Shown here: piece by piece, positions 1-55,784 of the stretch
How the letters are laid out: each line of letters opens with the position of its first letter
Numbering within the stretch: position 1 is the first letter of the stretch
Translations under genes and position numbers: made by a program
Source of the DNA: Phyllobates terribilis
Taxonomy: Eukaryota
Reading direction: 5' to 3'
DNA: 64,000 bases
Assembly: GCF_046119375.1 (NCBI RefSeq)
Contig: NW_027362764.1
Location: 164,548,001 to 164,612,000 of the forward strand
The notes under the pieces: generated by a model
Told to the model about the DNA's origin: nothing
The model's input: only the letters and a program-made list of their open reading frames with translations
Databases searched by the model: none

Positions 1-3000
1 GTGGGTATTACGGAAACCTGGCTGGATGAAATCCATGACTGGGTGACAAACATAGAGGGATACACTACATGTAGAAAAGACATCAAAGACAAAAATTGAG
101 GGGGGTGTATTTTCGTAAGATCCAACTTAAAACCTGTGCTTAATGATAACATTGGGGAGAGTCAGTCTGGGTTAATGTATATGGGGATGGCAATAATGGA
201 AAGCTGCTAATTGTTACAAGCCTCCTAATATAGTTGAACTGGTAGAGGACGAAATGCTGGAACAAATTAAAAATGCAGCAAATAATAACAGGGTTCTTAT
301 TATGGGGGATTTTAACTTTCCAGATATTCAATGGGACATAGAATCTTCCATTTGTGCTAAAAGCTGCAAGTTCTTATCCACAGTTCAGGACAATTGCCTC
401 TATCAGCTGGTAGATGAATCAACCAGGGGAGGTAATCCGCTGGATCTGGTTCTGTCAACTAGACCAGATACAATTTCAGCTCTACAGGTCCAGGAGCATT
501 TGGGAAACAGCAACCATAATTTGGCAAGTTTCAATGTAATATTCAATAAAACATTTCAAAAAGGAAATGCAAAAACCTGGAACTTTAGGAAAGCTGATAT
601 CAACAAACTAAGGGAAGAGCTTAATCGAGTAAACTGGGACCATGTCATGGTAACTTGGGATACCGAACGTAAATGGGGCATGTTTAAGGAAATACTACTA
701 GAATCCTGTAGAAAATGTATACACTCTGGTAATAAAATGTCCAGGAATAAAAAGAAACCATTATGGATAAATAAGACAGTACAAAGTTTAACAAGACAAA
801 AACAAAGGGCATTCAAAATCTTTAAGACCGAGAATAGAGAAATAGCTCTTCAGGAGTATAAAGACCTAAATAAGAAGTGTAAAAAAGAAATCAAGCTAGC
901 AAAATTATCTACAGAGCAAAAAATCGACAGGGACATTAAAATAAATCCCAAAATTTTTTATATATTCATCAATGCCAAAAAGAGAAAATCAGATGTTATA
1001 AGCCCCTTTAAAAACGATAATAAGATAATTATAGAAGACAAAGAAAAGGATGAAATATTAAACAGACACTTTTCATCCATGTTCACCAACAAACAGTCTG
1101 TTCAAGGGATCTTTCAACAGGGAAAAAAAATCAAACTTCACCACCTGATATAACTAGTTTAACACAAAAAGAAGTACGCCTGCGTCTGAGCAAATTAAAC
1201 ATTGACAAATCCCCTGGCCCAGATGGTATTTATCCATGGATACTGAGGGAATTGAGCTCAGTAATTGACAAACCGCTATATCTCTTGTAACAGGGGTAGT
1301 GCCACAAGATTGGAGTATAGCCAATGTGGTACCGATATTTAAGAAAGGTAAGAAGGTGGATCCTACTGTCCAGTAAATCTGACATCAGTAGTGCGCAATG
1401 TTTTTGAGGGCATCATAAGAGATGACCTGCAGAGTTATATAGCTGAGAATAATATAATAAATGATGACCAGCACGGATTCATGAAAAATAGCTTGTGTCT
1501 AACCAACATGTTGGGTTTCTATGAGGAGGTAAGTGCAAATCTGGATGTTGGTAATGCAGCTGATGTGATTTATCTGGACTTTGCAAAGGCATTTGATACT
1601 GTACCACATAGCAGCCTTATACTGAAGCTACAGAAGCAAAGACTTGGGTGAACTATATGTAGATGGGTAACGAATTGGCTAAATGATAGGAAACAAAGAG
1701 TCGTCATAAATGGTACATTCTTTAAATGGGACATAGTCAGCAGTGGGGGCCACAGGGATGTGTGCTAGGACCAATTCTTTTTAACCTCTTTATTAATGAC
1801 CTTGGGGATGGGATTGAGAGTAAAGTGTCAGTTTTTGCTGACAATACCAAACTATGTAGAATATTAAAATCAAATCTTGACATTACGATATGCAGAACGA
1901 TCTGGATAATATGACTCAATGGGCAATCATTTGGCAGATGAGGTTTAATGTAGATAAATGTAGAGTAATGCACCTAGGACGGAGTAATCCTATTGCTACA
2001 TATACATTTAATGGGAGTATACCCGGGACTACAGAACAGGAGAAGGACTTGGGTATTCTGGTTACAAGTAAGCTGAGCAGCAGTACTCAATGTCAAGCAG
2101 CAGCCACAAAAGCAAACAAGATTTTAGGATGTATAAAAAGAGAAATAAAATCCCGCGATCCCAACATATGGTTACCCCTTTATAAATCACTGGTGAGGCC
2201 ACATCTGGAATATGGGATCCAGTTTTGGGCTCCACATTTTAAAAAGGATATTCAGAAGTTAGAGTCAGTTCAAAGACGGGCAATTAGATTATTACAAGGA
2301 AAGGAAGGCCTCTCATATGATGAGAGGTTGAAAAAGTTGAGTTTGTTTAGCTTAGAAAAATGATGCCTCAGAGGAGATCTCATTTACATGTATAAATATA
2401 TGTGTGGTCAGTACAAAGGACTAGCACATGACTTATTCCTTCCAAAGACCATACTAAGGACCAGGGGGCACTTATTACGGGTGGGAGAAAGGCGATTCCG
2501 GCACCTAAACAGGAAAGGGTTCTTTACAGTCAGAACAGTCGGACTGTGGAATGCCCGACCACAAGATGTAGTGATAGCAGACACTATAACAGCTTTCAAA
2601 AAAGGGATGGATGATTTCCTCGATACAGGTAACATTGTGGGTTACAGTTAAATTAGACAAAATGTTACACCTAATGGAGTACATTTGATCCAGGGTTCTT
2701 GTACTGATCGCCTTTTATCGGGGGCAAGATGGAATTTTTCTCAGTGATGCAAATTGGCCAAATGTGTCCTGGAGCTTTTGCCTTCTTCTGGATCAACAGA
2801 TTTAGGTATAGGGATTTTAGTAAAATCATTATTAGAATCATAAGAGTAACACACAATATAAAACTAATTTAAAAAATTATAAACTGGTTCATTTATAATT
2901 GGAATAGTATAGTAATAATAAAAATGGTAATAATACATTTGTGAGGCCTAGTCCCAGTAAGTAAGTAAGTTAGTGTAGTGTTAGTGTAGGGAGTACAATT

Positions 3001-3040
3001 GGGGGAAAAAGGTTGAACTTGATGGACCTATGTCTTTTAC
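1..3040 (+). mobile_element. CR1 LINE, degraded ORF2 (endonuclease + reverse transcriptase) and 3' UTR; continues off the left edge
   Basis: Fragmented ORFs 254-1153 (IMGDFNFPDI, LDLVLS), 1391-1651 (QHGF, YLDFAKAFDTVPH), 1726-1914 ([18 protein letters not shown] where FADD is expected) and 1890-2363 (EKDLG, RPHLEY). Several frameshifts and stops. CR1-type 3' UTR ending GGTTGAACTTGATGGAC near 3030. Confidence 0.95.
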
Positions 3041-4209
3041 AAAGGGTACAAAATAATACAGCATATACAGTTACAGAAAATAAAAGGGATTAACAAGAGA
3101 ACTTACTACACCAGTCGCAGACATGATTCAGTTTAGCTGAAGGAGATCACTTCGATTGGCCATTCAGTGAACGGGGTCCCTACATACACGATGTGTATCT
3201 CTCTACACGAACAAAAATCATAATTCGGCTTGATCTTTGATCATCCATGAGTCCTACCCACACACTCCCGTCTGATGACGCTACCTGGACCAGGTTACAA
3301 GCTGGTTTCAGCCCTTCATGATTTTATGAAATCCCCAACTTATGCGATAACTCCTCTCCGGATGATCTCAGAAGTTGGAGATTGATGCAATATTTTTTAT
3401 CAGGATTTTATCATTACTTAGAGACCAAGCATGGCATAGCTGTTGTCAGTTATCTATTTCCTGTGGATTTATGGCTCATAGGCAGGTGCTACAAATATAA
3501 AAAATATGCATATTCTTCTCCACCTTGCCCCGGCGATGAAAATGTATATCCCATTCCTATGCGGTTTATAAAAACTCCAATATTCTATATTTTCTTTCAG
3601 TGCCTTAGTGTCCAGCAAATATGTGTGGATGAAAGGAATGTGCACCTGTGAAGGACAATAGCTATTTCTAAAGAGTGTGAGATATTCCTTTTGATCCTTA
3701 ATGAGCCTTTTCCTATCTATTCAATCTGTATTTTTCGTGTATATGCAATACACATCCTCGTTCAGTCATTTGGCCCATATGTTAAACTATGTATTTCACT
3801 AGACTAATTGCTCTCGCATGTTAATTAAGCTGGCTCACTATTCAATTTCCTACTTGTATTCTATTGTACAATCCTACATGTAAGTGTCAGCTGAGATTGC
3901 AAATGACAGAGGAATGGAGGGAGGGGAAGAGGGGTTTCAGAGATATTAATATTTTCATATTCTCTATGACACACCCAAACTGGAAAAATTACCATACACA
4001 GTGAAAACTTTATAAGAGAACTACCAAAAATTACAATGAAAAATGGTGTTTTAGAGATGAGCTTCTCGTAGATGATGACCGGTATAGAGATGGTCTGCTG
4101 AATGAGGTCTTCTCTTAGAAAGGTATCAGTGTGTCAAACAGTGATACTCAAAGGTTAGCAATTATCTTTGTTTAACTTACAGAAAAAATACTATTTTTAA
4201 TGCACTTAA

Positions 4210-42093: not shown

Positions 42094-42149
<56 letters not shown>

Positions 42150-42154
42150 AAATT

Positions 42155-42316
42155 GAGGCAGCACTCAAATAAAAGAGGACTCTTTATTGGCCCAGGTTGC
42201 TATGTTTTCTTTCTATAATAGAACCTTCTCAAGCTTCTTAATGAAGCTTCTGTTATGGAACTGAAACATCACCATATGGGCCAATAAAGAGTCCTCTTTT
42301 ATTGGAGTGCTGCCTC
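42155..42316. mobile_element. Short palindromic Penelope-like insertion with two degraded hammerhead relics
   Basis: Arms GAGGCAGCACTC-AAATAAAAGAGGACTCTTTATTGGCCCA / TGGGCCAATAAAGAGTCCTCTTTTATTGGAGTGCTGCCTC; the centre has UUGAGAA...AAAC and UUAAUGA...GAAACAUC relics on opposite strands. Confidence 0.55.
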
Positions 42317-42417
42317 CTTTTTCTTTATTATATTGTGAGACAATTCAGGTATATGTCTGAGATGCTTGGCACTCGAAACAAAATACCCTGGTGCTGCTAC
42401 ATCACAGTTTTTTTGTA

Positions 42418-42942
42418 GCTAGATAGATAAATAAATAAATAGATACAATAGGTAGATAGATACAATAGATAGATACAACAGATACTGTAGGTACGTAGAT
42501 AGATAAATGGATAGATACATACAATAGATAGATATAATAGATAGGTAGATAGATATAATAGATAGATAGATACAATATATTGATACGTAGAGAGATAAAT
42601 ACGATAGATAGCTACAATAGATAGATAGATACATAGATCGACAAATAGATATAATAGATAGGTAGAGATAGATAAATAGATAGATATATACAATAGATAG
42701 ATAGTTACGTACGTAGATAGATAAATAGATACATATGTAGAGAGATAAATAGATAGATACATACAATAGATACAGTAGATATGTAGATAGATAAATACGA
42801 TAGATAGATAAGATAGATAGATACAATAGATAGATAGATACATACGTAGATAGATAAACAGATATAAAGATACGTAGATAGATAAATAGATACAATAAAT
42901 AGATACGTAGACAGATAAATAGATAAATACGATAGATAGATA
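42418..42942. repeat. Long degenerate (GATA)n tract
   Basis: Direct reading; source of the low-complexity ORFs at 42397-43047. Confidence 0.95.
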
Positions 42943-43009
42943 AAAAATCCAAAAAATGAGGACAGCACTCCTATTAGAAATCCAGTGATTTATTTGCTCA
43001 AAAAGAGCT

Positions 43010-43052
43010 AAGGCGACGTTTCGGCTCTGTGTTTGAGCCTTTCTCAAGCCTT
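43010..43052 (-). ncRNA. Minimal type I hammerhead ribozyme motif, U3-A8 variant
   Basis: Minus strand AAGGC-UUGAGAA-A-GGCUC-AAACACA-GAGCC-GAAA-CG-UC-GCCUU: 5-bp stem I, 5-bp stem II, GUC triplet, palindromic ACGU stem III. AATAAA and a GGAGTGCTG end follow downstream. Confidence 0.75.
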
Positions 43053-43937
43053 TTTTGGATTTTAGATGTTGGGTTTGGTCTAAGCCTGGAGGACGTGCAC
43101 CCGATTTATATATTTTTGTTTGCTTGCTGGTGCTGTTTGGATTTTATTTTTTCTAGATAGATAGATCTACTGCAAAACTTGCTGAATTATTTTTATTAAA
43201 ATGTTTCAAAATAAACAAATGATTAAAACGAAAAATAATAAAAATCAGACAAGAAAAAAAAAAAAAAGACTGATAGGATGGGCCATTCTACCTTCAGACA
43301 TGCATATGGCTCCCATGGTTAACCTAACACTATGACCCCATACAGTTCTACACATTTAGCTGGGTTCGATCTGAAAGAGAGACTGTAAAACATGGCTGCA
43401 ATTTGCTTGTCTAAATCCAGTCTATATTAGCAAATACTGACAATTTGGCCAATTATGTAAAATTAGTTAAATAATTTGACAAATTCCCTTGCAAAAACAA
43501 CCAAGTAGCAACATATAACCTGCTAAAATTCCGATTTGCTGCGTTAGTTCTGATAATGTAGTTGATATGAAAATTAAGGAAGATTTATTAATCCTAATAT
43601 TTAGATGTTGTTAACTTGCCTAATTCATCACTGTGGCTCACGCTGGATGCATTTGGTGCATTTTTAGACACTTTTATTTCATTTTATACCACCTGTTGAT
43701 TGGCTTAGTTTGTGGCAACATTATGCACTAATATTTTCAATATTTTGGTACAATTTTCCTGCATGTGGTCACATTTTAAGCCATGTCCTCTGTCCACCAA
43801 AACGTCTGTTCTTTTGGCACAAAAGCTTGATAAATGTGTCTATAAATATCTTCCCCTAAATTTTGCAACTTCAGTAGTAATTATGCTTTCTGGATTTCTG
43901 TAATAAAGTTTCACACATCTACCAACATTTGTATGTG

Positions 43938-45295
43938 CAGTTGCAATAATAATTAACTAACTTTGCAAATTAAGTTTATTAGCAAAATTTACAAACTTTC
44001 TGCTGTTTGCAAGAAACCAATTAAACAAGAAAAAGTAAATGATATAACAAGTGGTTTCTCCATATGCAACACAAAATGCCACTTTTCATGACTACTGCAG
44101 TCTCAGAATTATTCATCCCCTTTATGACAAACATTTTTGCTGCTTAGTATTTTTTGGCTGTTCATGCTGCAAACGTGATGCATAGCCAGACACAAGCTTC
44201 TGGCAGTGTTCCTGAGAAATGTTTATTTGGTGATGGCCTCCAGTTCACTAATATTCCTGGGTTGTCAAGTCAGTGGTCCAAAAAGTCAGGAGGAGAGATC
44301 ATTGCCTTGTACAAAAAAAGGAAAACGAATCAAAAAGATAGTAAAGCATTGAATGTTCCTAGAGATACCGCTGGAAGCAGAGTTTGCAGATTCATAGTTA
44401 AAGGAACACTGGCTGCACTACCTGAAGATTCCTGAGGAGACAGGTGGTCAAAAACCCTCAAGTGACTTCAAGAGACCTGCAGCAAGATTTGGCAGGAACA
44501 AGCACTGAGGTTTTAATTTAAGTCCATAAAGCGCTCAAAGGCTTGGTTTCAGAAGTTCGGAAAATACTGAAGGGGCCAACACAGTCACCTGACTTGAGCC
44601 TGAAAGAAAATCTTTGGTGGGATATGAAGAAGTCAGATGCAGATTGCAAACCCAAGAATATTAGAAAACTGGAGGCCATTGCCCATGAGGAATGGGCTAA
44701 GATTCCTCAGGATTAGGGATGAGTGGACCCGTAGAAGTTCGGGTTTTGGTGCTTGACCCGAACTTTATTCCAAAGTTCGGTTTGGGTACCACAACTGTAC
44801 CCAAACCTGATCTAGAACCCGAACCCATTCAAAAGAATGGGGACCCAAACTTTTGAGCTGGAAAATTCTCTCTCCTCCCAGACTTCCCCAGGAAACAGGA
44901 ACATTGCAACTGATTTCCAGGAGAAGCTCATATTCGACGTTTCGCACCGGACACTAACGAACCTGAACTTTCAAGTTCGGGTTCGCTCTTCTGTACTCAG
45001 GAATGCTGCCAGAAGATGGTGTCTGAATATGTATCACGTTTGCTGCAGTTTATAACAGTCAAAGATACAGTAATAAATACTAAAGACGCTTGTCATGAAG
45101 GGGGGGATATTCTGAGTCTGCAGCAGTCAGCAGAAAGGGCATTTTGTAATGAATTTGGAGGAACCACTTGTTATATGGTGCTGAGCTATTTCAATTTATG
45201 TCATTTGACTGATTTATTGCAAACAGCAGAAAGTTTATAAAATTTGCTAATAAACCTAATTTGCCATGGAGGTTGAAGAATTTTCATTGCATCTG
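43938..45295 (+). mobile_element. Degraded, internally deleted Tc1 element
   Basis: Imperfect long TIRs (GCAAATTAAGTTTATTAGCAAAATTTACAAACTTTCTGCTGTTTGCAA and its reverse complement); transposase relics EIIALYKK...ALNVPRDTAGS and ENLWWDMKK...LEAIAHEEWAKIPQ. Confidence 0.85.
44714..44995. mobile_element. hAT-type MITE nested in the Tc1 relic
   Basis: Termini TAGGGATGAG / CTCTTCTGTA; near-perfect 8-bp TSD CTCAGGAT (44706-44713) / CTCAGGAA (44996-45003). Confidence 0.8.
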
Positions 45296-46654: not shown

Positions 46655-48284
46655 CAGTACAGACCAAAAGTTTGGACACACCTTCTCATTTAAAGATTTT
46701 TCTGTATTTTCATGACTATGAAAATTGTACATTCACACTGAAGGCATCAAAACTATGAATTACCACATGTGGAATTATATACTTAACAAAAAAGTGTGAA
46801 ACAACTGAAAATATGTCTTATATTCTAGGTTCTTCAAAGTAGCCACCTTTTGCTTTGATGACTGCTTTGCACACTCTTGGCATTCTCTTGATGAGCTACA
46901 AGAGGTAGTCACCGGAAATGGTTTTCCCTTCACAGGTGTGCCCTGTCAGGTTTAATAAGTGGGATTTCTTGCCTTATAAATGGGGTTGGGACCATCAGTT
47001 GTGTTGTGCAGAAGTCAGGTGGATACACAGCTGATAGTCCTACTGAATAGACTGTTAGAATTTGTATTATGGCAAGAAAAAAGCAGCTAAGTAAAGAAAA
47101 ACGAGTGGCCATCATTACTTTAAGAAATGAAGGTCAGACGGTCCGAAAAATTGGGCAAACTTTGAAAGTGTCCCCAAGTGCAGTTGCAAAAACCATTAAG
47201 CGCTACAAAGAAACTGGCTCACATGAGGACCGCCCCAGGAAAGGAAGACCAAGAGTCACCTCTGCTTCTGAGGATAAGTTTATCCGAGTCACCAGCCTCA
47301 GAAATCGCAGGTTAACAGCAGCTCAGATTAGAGACCAGATCAATGCCACACAGAGTTCTAGCAGCAGACACATCTCTACAACAACTGCTAAGAGGAGACT
47401 TTGTGCAGCAGGCCTTCATGGTAAAATAGCTGCTAGGAAACCACTGCTAAGGACAGGCAACAAGCAGAAGAGACTTGTTTGGGCTAAAGAGCACAAGGAA
47501 TGGACATTAGACCAGTGGAAATCTGTGCTTTGGTCTTATGAGTCCAAATTTGAGATCTTTGGTTCCAACCACCGTGTCTTTGTGCGACGCAGAAAAGGTG
47601 AACGGATGGACTCTACATGCCTGGTTCCCACCGTGAAGCATGGAGGAGGAGGTGTGATGGTGTGGGGGGGCTTTGCTGTTGACACTGTTGGGGATTTATT
47701 CAAAATTGAAGGCATACTGAACCAGCATGGCTACCACAGTATCTTGCAGCGGCATGCTTTTCCATCTGGTTTGCGTTTAGTTGGACCATCATTTATTTTT
47801 CAAAAGGACAATGACCCCAAACACACCTCCAGGCTGTGTAAGGGCTATTTGACCAAGAAGGAGAGTGATGGGGTGCTACGCCAGATGACCTGGCCTCCAC
47901 AGTCACCAGACCTGAACCCAATCGAGATGGTTTGGGGTGAGCTGGACCGCAGAGTGAAGGCAAAAGGGCCAACAAGTGCTAAGCATCTCTTGGAACTCCT
48001 TCAAGATTGTTGGAAGACCATTTCCGGTGACTACCTCTTGAAGCTCATCAAGAGAATGCCAAGAGTGCGCAAAGCAGTCATCAAAGCAAAAGGTGGCTAC
48101 TTTGAAGAACCTAGAATATAAGACATATTTTCAGTGGTTTCACACTTTTTTGTTAAGTATATAATTCCACATGTGGTAATTCATAGTTTTGATGCCTTCA
48201 GTGTGAATGTACAATTTTCATAGTCATGAAAATACAGAAAAATCTTTAAATGAGAAGGTGTGTCCAAACTTTTGGTCTGTACTG
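46655..48284 (+). mobile_element. Full-length Tc1/mariner element of the DD38E (Intruder/IT) type, 1630 bp
   Basis: TA target duplication (46653-46654, 48285-48286); 273-bp near-perfect TIRs (46655-46927, 48012-48284) starting CAGTACAGACCAAAAGTTTGGACACA. Confidence 0.96.
47069..48121 (+). CDS. Tc1-family transposase, 350 aa, DD38E spacing, first catalytic Asp replaced by Tyr
   Basis: Paired-like HTH N-terminus, GRPR motif, WSYESKF (WSDESKF expected), FQKDNDPKH (D247), SPDLNPIE (E286); 38 residues between D247 and E286. Confidence 0.93.
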   Translation: MARKKQLSKEKRVAIITLRNEGQTVRKIGQTLKVSPSAVAKTIKRYKETGSHEDRPRKGRPRVTSASEDKFIRVTSLRNRRLTAAQIRDQINATQSSSSRHISTTTAKRRLCAAGLHGKIAARKPLLRTGNKQKRLVWAKEHKEWTLDQWKSVLWSYESKFEIFGSNHRVFVRRRKGERMDSTCLVPTVKHGGGGVMVWGGFAVDTVGDLFKIEGILNQHGYHSILQRHAFPSGLRLVGPSFIFQKDNDPKHTSRLCKGYLTKKESDGVLRQMTWPPQSPDLNPIEMVWGELDRRVKAKGPTSAKHLLELLQDCWKTISGDYLLKLIKRMPRVRKAVIKAKGGYFEEPRI

Positions 48285-53526: not shown

Positions 53527-55784
53527 GGCTGTGTGCCCACGATGCGTTTTTTAAGCGTTTCCGCAGCGGCAAAAACGCTGCAGAAACGCTTAAAAAACGC
53601 ATGGTAGAAGGCCTGCCATGTTCCCCAATGATAATCCGCATGTGCTGTGCACATGCTGCGGAAATTTCCGCTGCGGATTATCATTGCGGAAAAAAACGCA
53701 GCACTACCAATTACTTTGCGGAAGCGCTGCGTTTTCGCCACCATTGACTTGCATTACAACGCGCCAATTCCGCTTCACTAGATAAGGACATGCAGAATGC
53801 ACGCGTTCCAATGTGCGGATGGTACCCAGGTCTAGAGGAGAGGAGACTCTCCTCCGGACCCGGGTACCATAGAAAACTGTGAAAAAAAGAATAAAATAAA
53901 AAATACAGATTATATTTACCTTCTGGCGGCCCCCGGTCTCCTTGTCTGTACTTGCCGGCAGTTCGCGATGGACTGAAGGACCTGCGCTGACGTCATAGTC
54001 ATGTGACGGGTCACGCGACGCTGACGTCGGCAGGTCCTTCAGTGTACCGCTGCCGGCAGCCAGGACGGAGGGAATCAAGACACTGGGGGCCATCGGAAGG
54101 TAAGTATACATTATTTTTTTTATTTTTTTACATTCTCTCGGGTCACACTATATAAATCCATGCCATTTGCATGGATTTATATAGTGTGACCAAGTTGTCA
54201 AGCACTTTCCAAGTGAAGGGGAAGAAGGTGGACCCAGGGAACTATAGGCCGGTGAGTCTGACTTCTATACCAGGAAAGATCTTTGAACAAATTATTAAAC
54301 AACTTGTATGTAAGTACATGGATAAGAATGAAGTGATTAACCAGAGTCAGCATGGGTTTGTAACTAACAAGTCATGTCAGACTAACTTAATTTCCTTCTA
54401 TGACAGAATCACTGACTGGGTGGATCAGGGAAATGCTGTAGATATAGTATATCTTGACTTCAGCAAAGCATTTGACAAAGTATCTCACACCATCCTTATT
54501 GAAAAAATGACCAAGTATGCAATGGACCAGGCAACTGTTAGGTGGATTCATAACTGGCTTAGTGATCGGACTCAAAGGGTGGTTGTAAATGGCTTCACAT
54601 CCAGCTGGATGAATGTCTCAAGTGGGGTACCACAGGGCTCCGTCCTGGGACCTGTATTGTTCAACATTTTTATCAATGATTTAGATGAAGGAATTGAGGG
54701 TAAACTGATTAAATTTGCTGATGACACAAAGCTAGGAGGGATAGCTAATACTAGAGAAGAGAGAGAGAGTATTCAAAAAGACCTAAATAAACTGGAGCAG
54801 TGGGCAGCAACCAACAGAATGGTTTTTAACAGGGAAAAATGCAAAGTACTACATCTGGGCAATAAAAATGAAAAAAGCATATACAGAATGGGAGGAATAG
54901 AGCTAAGCAACAGTACATGTGAAAAAGACTTAGGTATACTAATAGATCATAGACTGAACATGAGTCAACAGTGTGATGCAGCAGCAAAAAAGGCAAATAC
55001 AATTCTGGGATGTATTAACAGAAGCATACAGTCTAGATCACGTGAAGTCATTATCGGTCTTTACTCCTCTTTGGTCAGACCTCATCTGGAATACTGTGTA
55101 CAGTTTTGGGCACCACATTTTAAAAAAGACATAGACAAACTGGAGCAAGTTCAGAGAAGAGCGACCAGAATGGTGACTGGTCTGCAAACCATGTCCTATG
55201 AGGAACGGTTGCAGGATTTGGGAATGTTTAGCTTGCAAAAAAGAAGACTGAGAGGAGACTTAATAGCTGTCTACAAATATGTCAAGGGCTGTCACATTGT
55301 AGAAGGATCATCTTTATTCTCATTTGCACAAGGAAAGACTAGAAGCAATGGGATGAAACTAAATGGGAGGAGACACAGATTAGATATTAGAAAAAACTTT
55401 TTGACAGTTAGGGTGATTAATGAGTGGAACAGGCTGCCACGAGAGGTGGTGAGTTCCCCTTCAATGGACGTCTTCAAACAGAGGCTGGACAGACATGATC
55501 TAGTGAATCCTGCTTTGAGCAGGGGGTTGGACCAGATGACCCAGGAGGTCCCTTCCAACTCTACCATTCTATGATTCTATGATTCTATGCTAAAATCGCT
55601 TGGAAAGTGCTTGTCAACCCGTATGCGGAAATGCAAGTGAAGAACGCTTCACATCCGCATGTCCCTGGCAGGAAAACGCATGTACAATCCACATGTACAA
55701 TCCGCATGCGTTTTTTTCTGCCAGGGAGATGCAGAAACGCTCAGGAAAAAATCCTGAGCATTTCTGCATCGTGGGCACATAGCC
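53527..55784. mobile_element. Harbinger-type non-autonomous element containing a CR1 insertion
   Basis: TIRs GGCTGTGTGCCCACGATGC / GCATCGTGGGCACATAGCC; TAA on both sides (53524-53526, 55785-55787). Confidence 0.88.
54217..55589 (+). mobile_element. 5'-truncated young CR1 LINE (RT domain and 3' UTR)
   Basis: Uninterrupted ORF 54171-55574 with NYRPVSLTS, QHGF, YLDFSKAFDKV, PQGSVLGP, FADDTKL and EKDLG; tail (ATTCTATG)x3 at 55566-55589. Confidence 0.97.

What the first reader, a model, noticed from the sequence alone, without database searches (positions are those of the whole stretch)
43010..43052. Structurally intact hammerhead ribozyme with a compensatory U3-A8 core
Seen: stems I and II pair fully (5 bp each), the triplet is GUC, and the core reads UUGAGAA rather than CUGANGA. 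Established: C3-G8 is a tertiary Watson-Crick pair, so U3-A8 is a compensatory variant. Minimal type I hammerheads with palindromic stem III occur in Penelope-like elements and retrozymes and can cleave as dimers. An extra A after A9 is known in natural hammerheads. Inference: this ~210-bp cassette (about 42945-43155, with AATAAA and inverted CAGCAC/GTGCTG ends) is a non-autonomous Penelope/retrozyme unit that may still self-cleave and could cut an overlapping minus-strand transcript.
Basis: partly seen in the sequence, partly recalled or inferred. Interest (0 to 1): 0.7.

Follow-up and report, generated by a model that had tools for sequence, protein, structure and literature searches.

The report
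Penelope-type mini hammerhead, U3-A8 variant
The stretch is a real, sequence-intact copy of the small hammerhead self-cleaving RNA motif carried by Penelope-like jumping genes, with a paired U-A core swap published for these elements in 2014; here it is a lone copy in a frog microsatellite, so it is ordinary.

Summary
On the minus strand, 43052 to 43010 reads as a minimal type I hammerhead:
- 5-bp stems I and II
- core UUGAGAA (U3/A8) plus one extra A
- GAA
- palindromic ACGU helix III
- GUC cleavage triplet

It is not chance. Simulated windows give no such motif. In DNA contigs of two frog samples, these same roughly 40 nt are 10 to 50 times more abundant than their flanks. Fewer than 5% of that depth differs at U3 or A8, so the swap is fixed in the family and is not decay.

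The same core string occurs in other organisms with different, still pairing, stems. In one case it lies 220 nt after the RT and GIY-YIG ORF of a full Penelope-like element.

The unpaired base, G10.1-C11.1, the palindromic helix III and the U3-A8 covariation were all described for Penelope hammerheads by Cervera and de la Peña (2014).

The proposed 210-bp unit is not supported. It is a composite, not tandem, and its hammerhead-bearing half lies the other way round at two other contig junctions. No partner hammerhead lies within 64 kb, so cleavage here is unlikely. No transcript or gene was found.

Earlier notes of this scan reported U3-A8 Penelope hammerheads elsewhere in this genome.

The parts
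43010..43052 (-). Minimal type I hammerhead motif with U3-A8 core, one unpaired A before stem II, ACGU helix III and a GUC triplet. Predicted cleavage is between 43015 and 43014.
   Evidence: for sequence and fold; this same stretch is a high-copy island, with no variant of at least 5% at U3 (43047) or A8 (43042).
43041..43047 (-). Catalytic core strand UUGAGAA (positions 3-9). 43040 is the unpaired A between A9 and G10.1.
   Evidence: The feature is described for Penelope hammerheads in PMC4209133.
43023..43039 (-). Stem II (GGCUC/GAGCC, with G10.1-C11.1) and its 7-nt loop.
   Evidence: In one search the only family variation here is in the loop (43031, and a 3-nt insertion behind 43028).
43015..43022 (-). 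G12-A13-A14, the palindromic A15.1-C-G-U16.1, and C17. It holds two CpGs, which are the main sites of family variation (43015 G>A in about 30% of depth, giving U17; 43018 G>A in about 9%).
42944..43063 (-). The ~120-nt hammerhead-bearing module, bounded by a perfect 13-nt inverted repeat (42944-42956 / 43051-43063). After the hammerhead come a small hairpin, AATAAA (42994->42989), a second hairpin and the end motif GGAGUGCUGUCCUC followed by a U-run.
   Evidence: this block is inverted relative to 43062-43152 at two other contig junctions; the end motif is shared with the arms of the element at 42147-42324.
43064..43152 (+). Right segment (R), ending CTGGTGCTG...TTGGATTTT and a T-run. It has lower copy number than the hammerhead. 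At the other junctions it follows the hammerhead module head-to-tail.
   Evidence: (depth, joints, records 1 and 11).
42416..42944 (.). Degenerate (TAGA)n array on the left of the cassette. A short (TAGA)4 resumes at 43152-43168 on the right, so the cassette sits inside a tetranucleotide microsatellite.
42147..42415 (.). Sister element in the same (TAGA)n array. It has 82-nt inverted arms, each ending AATAAA-hairpin-GGAGTGCTGCCTC, then an R-like piece ending CTGGTGCTG and a T-run. It has no hammerhead.
   Evidence: (I1), and (GTGCTG invariant in all five ends).

Best explanation
This is one solitary copy of a Penelope-like-element (PLE) minimal type I hammerhead, identical to its family's consensus. 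It belongs to a frog lineage in which the tertiary C3-G8 pair is replaced by U3-A8. In source elements such motifs lie in the non-coding pseudo-LTR near the 3' end. They are thought to process multimeric element RNA by pairing two copies through the palindromic helix III (a double hammerhead). Here only a ~120-nt non-coding 3'-terminal fragment survives (hammerhead, AATAAA, conserved GGAGUGCUG...U-run end). It is joined in inverted orientation to a second short fragment with the same kind of end, and both sit inside a (TAGA)n microsatellite. That is the truncated, inverted, microsatellite-biased geometry that PLE insertions leave. With no PLE ORF and no second hammerhead within 64 kb, the copy is most likely a catalytically idle relic. 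Shown: the motif, family membership, fixation of U3-A8, and the same variant in a bona fide PLE elsewhere. Inferred: PLE origin of this particular copy, insertion mechanism, and inactivity.
For: Motif and fold. Beyond chance. Family: in contigs of two DNA samples the depth over 43009-43050 is 1600-3500, against about 200 in the flanks and about 50 at 43058-71. Many contigs lose likeness exactly at 43049 and at 43001/43012. The only variants of at least 5% are C17->U, CpG decay in ACGU, loop 2 and outer stem I, with none in the core or stem II. Published PLE minimal-hammerhead features are all present: an unpaired nucleotide between 9 and 10.1, G10.1-C11.1, palindromic 15.2-16.2, a 4-5 bp helix I, and U3-A8 covariation. 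The same core strings in a metagenome scan gave 32 unique hits. Eight of them have stem I of at least 3 bp and stem II extended by at least 2 bp, against 0.74 expected (0 of 10000 permutations), and their stems differ from the frog's. [quoted passage not shown] Further U3-A8 motifs with other stems occur in the same contigs. The PLE insertion geometry (5' truncation, inverted copies, microsatellite bias) is described in PMC8557442. The locus shows inverted arms with homologous ends inside (TAGA)n.
Against: No PLE ORF was found in the window, so PLE origin of this copy is by analogy. I could not retrieve the individual frog copies. Within-family stem covariation is therefore untested, except for one linked case: contig X10 record 8 carries 43011 A>T together with a different upstream strand. 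The metagenome rows share 20 fixed bases by design, and the rows aligned were chosen by their stems, so that count is partly circular. The 13-nt perfect inverted repeat around the module, and its occurrence in both orientations next to the same neighbour, would also fit a small DNA-transposon or fold-back element. No cleavage data exist for this sequence.
Confidence: 0.75

Rival explanations
1. It is a working ribozyme unit. The ~200-bp cassette would be a non-autonomous PLE or retrozyme element that is transcribed from the minus strand and self-cleaves after C17 (as a trans-dimer with RNA from other copies), perhaps giving circular RNA or cutting a host transcript.
For: The motif is identical to the family consensus and keeps both CpGs. 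The hammerhead fold is the MFE in a 120-nt context. AATAAA lies on the same strand. Contig X9 record 16 (a run of unknown library type) covers 42981-43131 with one difference, and a contig from a run guessed to be RNA holds a paralogous copy.
Against: There is no tandem unit and only one hammerhead in 64 kb. The helix III duplex ACGU/ACGU is worth only about -1.7 to -3.1 kcal/mol. Published minimal hammerheads show no monomer cleavage and weak dimer cleavage. The cassette is not a coherent repeat unit. No listed holder of the locus is on record as RNA. Contigs cannot show RNA ends.
Confidence: 0.1
2. It is a MITE or fold-back DNA element that carries a captured hammerhead. The module 42944-43063, with its perfect 13-nt terminal inverted repeats (or the whole cassette with its CAGCAC/GTGCTG ends), would be moved by a transposase, and the hammerhead would be a passenger.
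For: There are perfect 13-nt inverted repeats. The module is found in both orientations beside the same neighbour. The sister element has 82-nt inverted arms and the same GTGCTG ends.
Against: No target-site duplication is visible at either boundary. Most family copies share only the hammerhead and lose likeness inside the supposed terminal repeat, at 43049. Inverted 5'-truncated copies are themselves a PLE hallmark. The ends carry AATAAA plus a U-run on the hammerhead strand, which looks like a retroelement 3' end.
Confidence: 0.12
3. It is a chance look-alike. A degenerate 43-nt pattern with two non-consensus core positions would have arisen at random in AT-rich repeat DNA.
For: Over the tens of megabases scanned in this genome, a few hits to so relaxed a descriptor are expected (my estimate and base frequencies). 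Rfam finds nothing.
Against: The exact 40-nt stretch is a high-copy family with boundaries that coincide with the motif. The same variant occurs with covarying stems in other organisms, including in a PLE. The Rfam blank is uninformative.
Confidence: 0.03

Closest known systems
Minimal hammerheads (min-HHRs) of metazoan Penelope-like elements (Cervera & de la Peña 2014, PMC4209133)
   Same: Type I topology, a 5-bp helix I, an unpaired nucleotide between A9 and G10.1, G10.1-C11.1, palindromic ACGU in place of helix III, and the U3-A8 covariant core. It is a high-copy family that is mostly solitary and ORF-less. Amphibian genomes are already known to hold thousands (about 9000 in Xenopus tropicalis).
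   Different: U3-A8 was reported for Schistosoma mansoni Cercyon elements, and here it is fixed in a poison-frog family. Linkage of this copy to a PLE pseudo-LTR was not shown.
Non-LTR retrozymes / amphibian satellite-2-type repeats (Cervera & de la Peña 2020, PMC7229834; Li, Clavereau & Pollet 2026 preprint)
   Same: A type I hammerhead with a weak palindromic helix III that needs dimers. These are non-coding, PLE-related, and monomeric dispersed derivatives exist.
   Different: Retrozymes are tandem units, each with a hammerhead, and give circular RNA. Here there is one hammerhead, no tandem repeat, and a composite rearranged flank.
EN+ Penelope-like element in metagenome contig WLWD01000365.1 (locus L028)
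   Same: Identical core and helix III strings (UUGAGAA-A-GG...CC-GAAACGUC), and a similar stem II and loop (GGCU-AGCACAC-AGCC against GGCUC-AAACACA-GAGCC).
   Different: There the motif sits 220 nt after an intact 879-aa RT-GIY-YIG ORF. Stem I (ACCC/GGGU) and the flanks are unrelated to the frog copy. The organism is unknown.

Membership tests
Hammerhead ribozyme, type I | Three-way junction with conserved core C3-U4-G5-A6-N7-G8-A9 / G12-A13-A14 and cleavage after H17 | tested here: inconclusive
   9 of 11 core positions are canonical. Positions 3 and 8 are U and A, a pairing-preserving swap. H17 is C. No Rfam hammerhead model matches, but Rfam also misses a canonical-core minimal hammerhead.
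Hammerhead ribozyme, type I | Self-cleavage activity | not testable with these tools
   Needs in vitro transcription or RNA-end mapping. Only contigs were available, and contigs cannot show RNA ends.
PLE minimal hammerhead (min-HHR) | [quoted passage not shown] | tested here: met
   A at 43040. The feature is listed in PMC4209133.
PLE minimal hammerhead (min-HHR) | G10.1-C11.1 closing pair of helix II | tested here: met
   G at 43039 pairs with C at 43023.
PLE minimal hammerhead (min-HHR) | Palindromic 15.2-16.2 or loop 3, allowing a dimeric helix III | tested here: met
   ACGU at 43019-43016. The duplex is predicted to be weak, -1.7 to -3.1 kcal/mol.
PLE minimal hammerhead (min-HHR) | Consensus families within a genome, with compensatory changes in the stems | tested here: inconclusive
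   A high-copy family is shown, but at 80% likeness or more no stem II variation is seen, and individual copies could not be fetched. Across organisms the same core has covarying stems.
PLE minimal hammerhead (min-HHR) | Location in the pseudo-LTR of an element encoding RT and a GIY-YIG endonuclease | tested here: not met
   No PLE ORF was found among the window's large ORFs. It is met only for the homologous variant in L028. Most published min-HHRs are likewise solitary.
Non-LTR retrozyme | Tandem repeat of units, each carrying a hammerhead | tested here: not met
   The only tandem repeats are the (TAGA)n arrays. There is a single hammerhead-like motif in 64 kb.
Non-LTR retrozyme | Circular RNA of unit length | not testable with these tools
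   No raw RNA reads were available.

The most novel reading that the evidence does not exclude
The U3-A8 minimal hammerhead is an independently conserved module in this frog. It is kept nearly invariant across several otherwise diverged repeat families (a 40-nt island 10-50 times more abundant than any flank) because it is catalytically active in vivo, for example as trans-dimers between dispersed copies. Even solitary copies such as this one could then cleave RNAs that contain them.
Probability: 0.08. Interest if true: 0.55.

Novelty: new member of a known kind. Interest (0 to 1): 0.2.

Why it matters
It adds a vertebrate (poison-frog) family to the U3-A8 core variant of Penelope-type hammerheads. 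In the one paper read here that names it, the variant was reported for a flatworm element. It also shows the variant is fixed in the family, not a product of decay, which is natural support for the C3-G8 tertiary pair being replaceable by U-A. For this locus itself nothing follows: it is a gene-less relic with no partner ribozyme. A useful by-product is the calibration that Rfam hammerhead models miss minimal Penelope hammerheads altogether, so blanks from that search should not be read as absence.

Tried and rejected
- Rfam at gathering and at E<=10 found no hammerhead. The control shows this blank is uninformative.
- A search of the window for a second copy or a partner hammerhead found none.
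- The viral-contig scan with the core pattern gave 0 hits.
- The search of earlier findings by sequence was blank.
- A search for a host gene or PLE ORF turned up only LINE and Tc1 ORFs and nothing near the locus, so the 'cuts a host transcript' idea could not be tested.
- RNAcofold of two monomers gives a trivial extended duplex, not the double hammerhead, because the double hammerhead is a crossing structure. Only the helix III duplex energy was kept.
- I did not build a covariance model from alignment A2. Its rows share 20 fixed bases with the frog motif by design, so a hit in the window would be circular.
- The big protein searches were not used. Pfam already settled the L028 ORF.

Full report
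**1. The observation**

Reading the minus strand from 43052 to 43010 gives AAGGC | UUGAGAA | A | GGCUC-AAACACA-GAGCC | GAA | ACGU | C | GCCUU.
- Stems I and II are 5 Watson-Crick pairs each.
- The triplet is GUC and helix III is reduced to the palindrome ACGU.
- The core differs from CUGANGA only at positions 3 (U) and 8 (A). One extra A precedes G10.1.
- RNAfold gives exactly this junction as the minimum-energy structure for the 53-nt stretch and for the 120-nt module around it.

The motif is on the minus strand.

**2. Chance**

It finds none in 300 simulated windows. From base frequencies I estimate about 0.004 hits per window. Over the roughly 50 Mb of this genome already scanned, a few chance hits are therefore possible. 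The descriptor statistic alone is not decisive.

Rfam finds no hammerhead even at E<=10 on 701 nt. It also finds nothing for a canonical-core minimal hammerhead in the same locus as a genuine Penelope-like element. That blank therefore carries no weight.

**3. Family evidence in the frog**

Earlier notes of the scan call the genome a frog, the golden poison frog. I did not verify the species. Contigs of two DNA samples of the same organism were laid on 42946-43152 at 80% likeness or more.

Summed depth by segment:

| Segment | Depth |
|---|---|
| 43009-43050 (the motif) | 1600-3500 |
| 42946-43000 (left part) | 170-700 |
| 43051-43071 (spacer) | about 50-115 |
| 43072-43152 (right part) | 160-390 |

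- Contigs identical to the locus have a depth of about 10-19.
- Many contigs lose likeness exactly at 43049 (25 in X1 and 16 in X5) and at 43001 or 43012.
- So the roughly 40 nt that make up the hammerhead are themselves a high-copy module, far more abundant than anything around them.

Variants within the module that reach 5% of depth:
- 43015 G>A changes C17 to U17, still an allowed H. It accounts for about 30% of depth and is a CpG site.
- 43018 G>A breaks the ACGU palindrome. It accounts for about 9% and is a CpG site.
- 43011 A>T lies in outer stem I.
- There are also loop-2 changes: 43031, and a 3-nt insertion behind 43028.

Nothing is listed at U3 (43047), at A8 (43042), in the rest of the core, or in stem II. 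A C3/G8 relative would still pass the 80% threshold. U3-A8 is therefore the fixed state of this family and not decay of this copy, and this copy equals the family consensus.

One contig (X10 record 8) links 43011 A>T with a different upstream strand that restores the 2.4-1.4 pair. That is a single case and I give it little weight. The tool does not return contig sequences, so within-family covariation could not be counted.

**4. The same variant elsewhere**

An exact-pattern scan of metagenome contigs fixed only the core, G10.1-G10.2/C11.2-C11.1 and GAAACGUC. It gave 46 loci and 32 unique sequences.
- Eight unique sequences also have stem I of at least 3 bp and at least 2 further stem II pairs. 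The expectation after shuffling flanks and inner sequence is 0.74, and 0 of 10000 permutations reach 8.
- Their stems differ from the frog's and from each other. In alignment A2, 90.7% of cells pair and 8 of 10 pairs show double changes. That count is partly circular, because the rows were chosen by their stems. The permutation test is the independent figure.
[quoted passage not shown] That is an endonuclease-bearing Penelope-like element.
- A generic descriptor run on these loci found three more minimal hammerheads not forced by the pattern. Two have U3-A8 with other N7 and other stems, and one has a canonical core. All carry the extra A and ACGU.
- L038 holds a 140-nt tandem repeat of 4.3 copies with the motif in its units.

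**5. Literature**

Cervera and de la Peña 2014 (PMC4209133) describe minimal hammerheads in the pseudo-LTRs of Penelope-like elements with the following properties:
- helix I of 4-5 bp;
- a conserved G10.1-C11.1 pair;
- palindromic 15.2-16.2;
- about 9000 minimal hammerheads in Xenopus tropicalis, mostly solitary;
- no monomer cleavage and only weak dimer cleavage in vitro.

Every feature of the frog motif is in that description. It was the only paper in the library that holds both 'hammerhead' and 'U3-A8'.

Craig et al. 2021 (PMC8557442) describe strong 5' truncation, tandem and inverted partial copies, end 'tails' and microsatellite insertion bias for these elements. A 2026 preprint derives vertebrate non-LTR retrozymes from Penelope pseudo-LTRs. 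That C3-G8 is a tertiary Watson-Crick pair whose double swaps partly retain activity is from my own knowledge of the hammerhead literature (Martick and Scott 2006; Przybilski and Hammann 2007; Nelson and Uhlenbeck 2008) and was not checked here.

**6. The cassette**

The 210-bp 'unit' is not one unit.
- Besides the depth steps, two junction contigs per DNA sample join the reverse complement of 42946-43044 directly to 43062-43152. The contigs have single-copy depth, and I read them as the same two other loci seen in both samples.
- There the hammerhead-bearing block lies head-to-tail with the right segment. In the window it is inverted (joints and records 1 and 11).
- The block is bounded by a perfect 13-nt inverted repeat, 42944-42956 / 43051-43063.
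- Its 3' end on the hammerhead strand is AATAAA, a hairpin, GGAGUGCUGUCCUC and a U-run.
- The right segment ends on the + strand with CTGGTGCTG...TTGGATTTT and a T-run.
- A second element 800 bp away in the same (TAGA)n array (42147-42415) has two 82-nt inverted arms with the same kind of end, plus a similar right piece.

Both elements are embedded in (TAGA)n on both sides. I read this as two truncated, partly inverted insertions of related non-coding Penelope-type 3' ends into one microsatellite. This is inference. A small fold-back DNA element is the main alternative, but I saw no target-site duplication.

**7. Function at this locus**

- No second hammerhead lies within 64 kb.
- The monomer cannot close ACGU.
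- The intermolecular ACGU/ACGU helix is worth only about -1.7 to -3.1 kcal/mol.
- No PLE ORF and no coding evidence lie nearby.
- No listed holder of the locus is on record as RNA.
- A near-identical 151-nt contig comes from a run of unknown type, and one paralogous contig comes from a run guessed to be RNA. Neither shows transcription of this copy.

The most likely state is an intact-looking but idle relic. Self-cleavage is neither shown nor excluded.

**8. Verdict**

- Novelty: it is a new member of a known kind.
- The scan has already noted U3-A8 Penelope hammerheads on other pieces of this genome. I treated those notes as leads and checked the 2014 paper myself.
- Interest is low.

Noticed in passing
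window 42147-42415: A second element in the same (TAGA)n array. It has 82-nt inverted arms (42147-42228 / 42243-42324, 83% complementary, 14-nt spacer), each ending AATAAA-hairpin-GGAGTGCTGCCTC. An R-like piece ending CTGGTGCTG and a T-run follows. It has no hammerhead and shares its end motifs with the hammerhead cassette.
   Followed up: partly
window 43965-45264: A ~1.3-kb fold-back structure with three collinear inverted arm pairs (75, 68 and 52 nt, 82-85% complementary). ORFs inside have no Pfam match.
   Followed up: partly
window 47069-48121 (+): An open 350-aa Tc1/mariner-type transposase ORF (HTH_Tnp_Tc3_2, DDE_3).
   Followed up: no
window 254-1153 (+) and 54171-55574 (+): Non-LTR (LINE-type) ORF pieces, one with Exo_endo_phos_2 and one with RVT_1 (E 1e-35). 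They are not Penelope-like and not near the hammerhead.
   Followed up: no
L028:3435-6325 (metagenome contig WLWD01000365.1): An apparently intact Penelope-like element ORF (879 aa, RVT_1 plus C-terminal GIY-YIG) with a U3-A8 minimal hammerhead 220 nt after the stop. An unrelated canonical-core minimal hammerhead lies at L028:1981-2017. The host organism is unknown.
   Followed up: partly
L038:746-1343 and L033 (termite-gut metagenome contigs): A 140-nt tandem repeat (4.3 copies). The U3-A8 core pattern recurs at 138-140-nt spacing (three exact pattern hits per locus), but their stems pair poorly in my simple check. The layout is retrozyme-like and probably host insect DNA.
   Followed up: partly
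L028:1800-2500: Rfam release 15 finds no hammerhead family, even at E<=10, for a canonical-core (CUGAUGA...GAAAC) minimal hammerhead in the same locus as a Penelope-like element. Rfam blanks are therefore uninformative for this class.
   Followed up: yes
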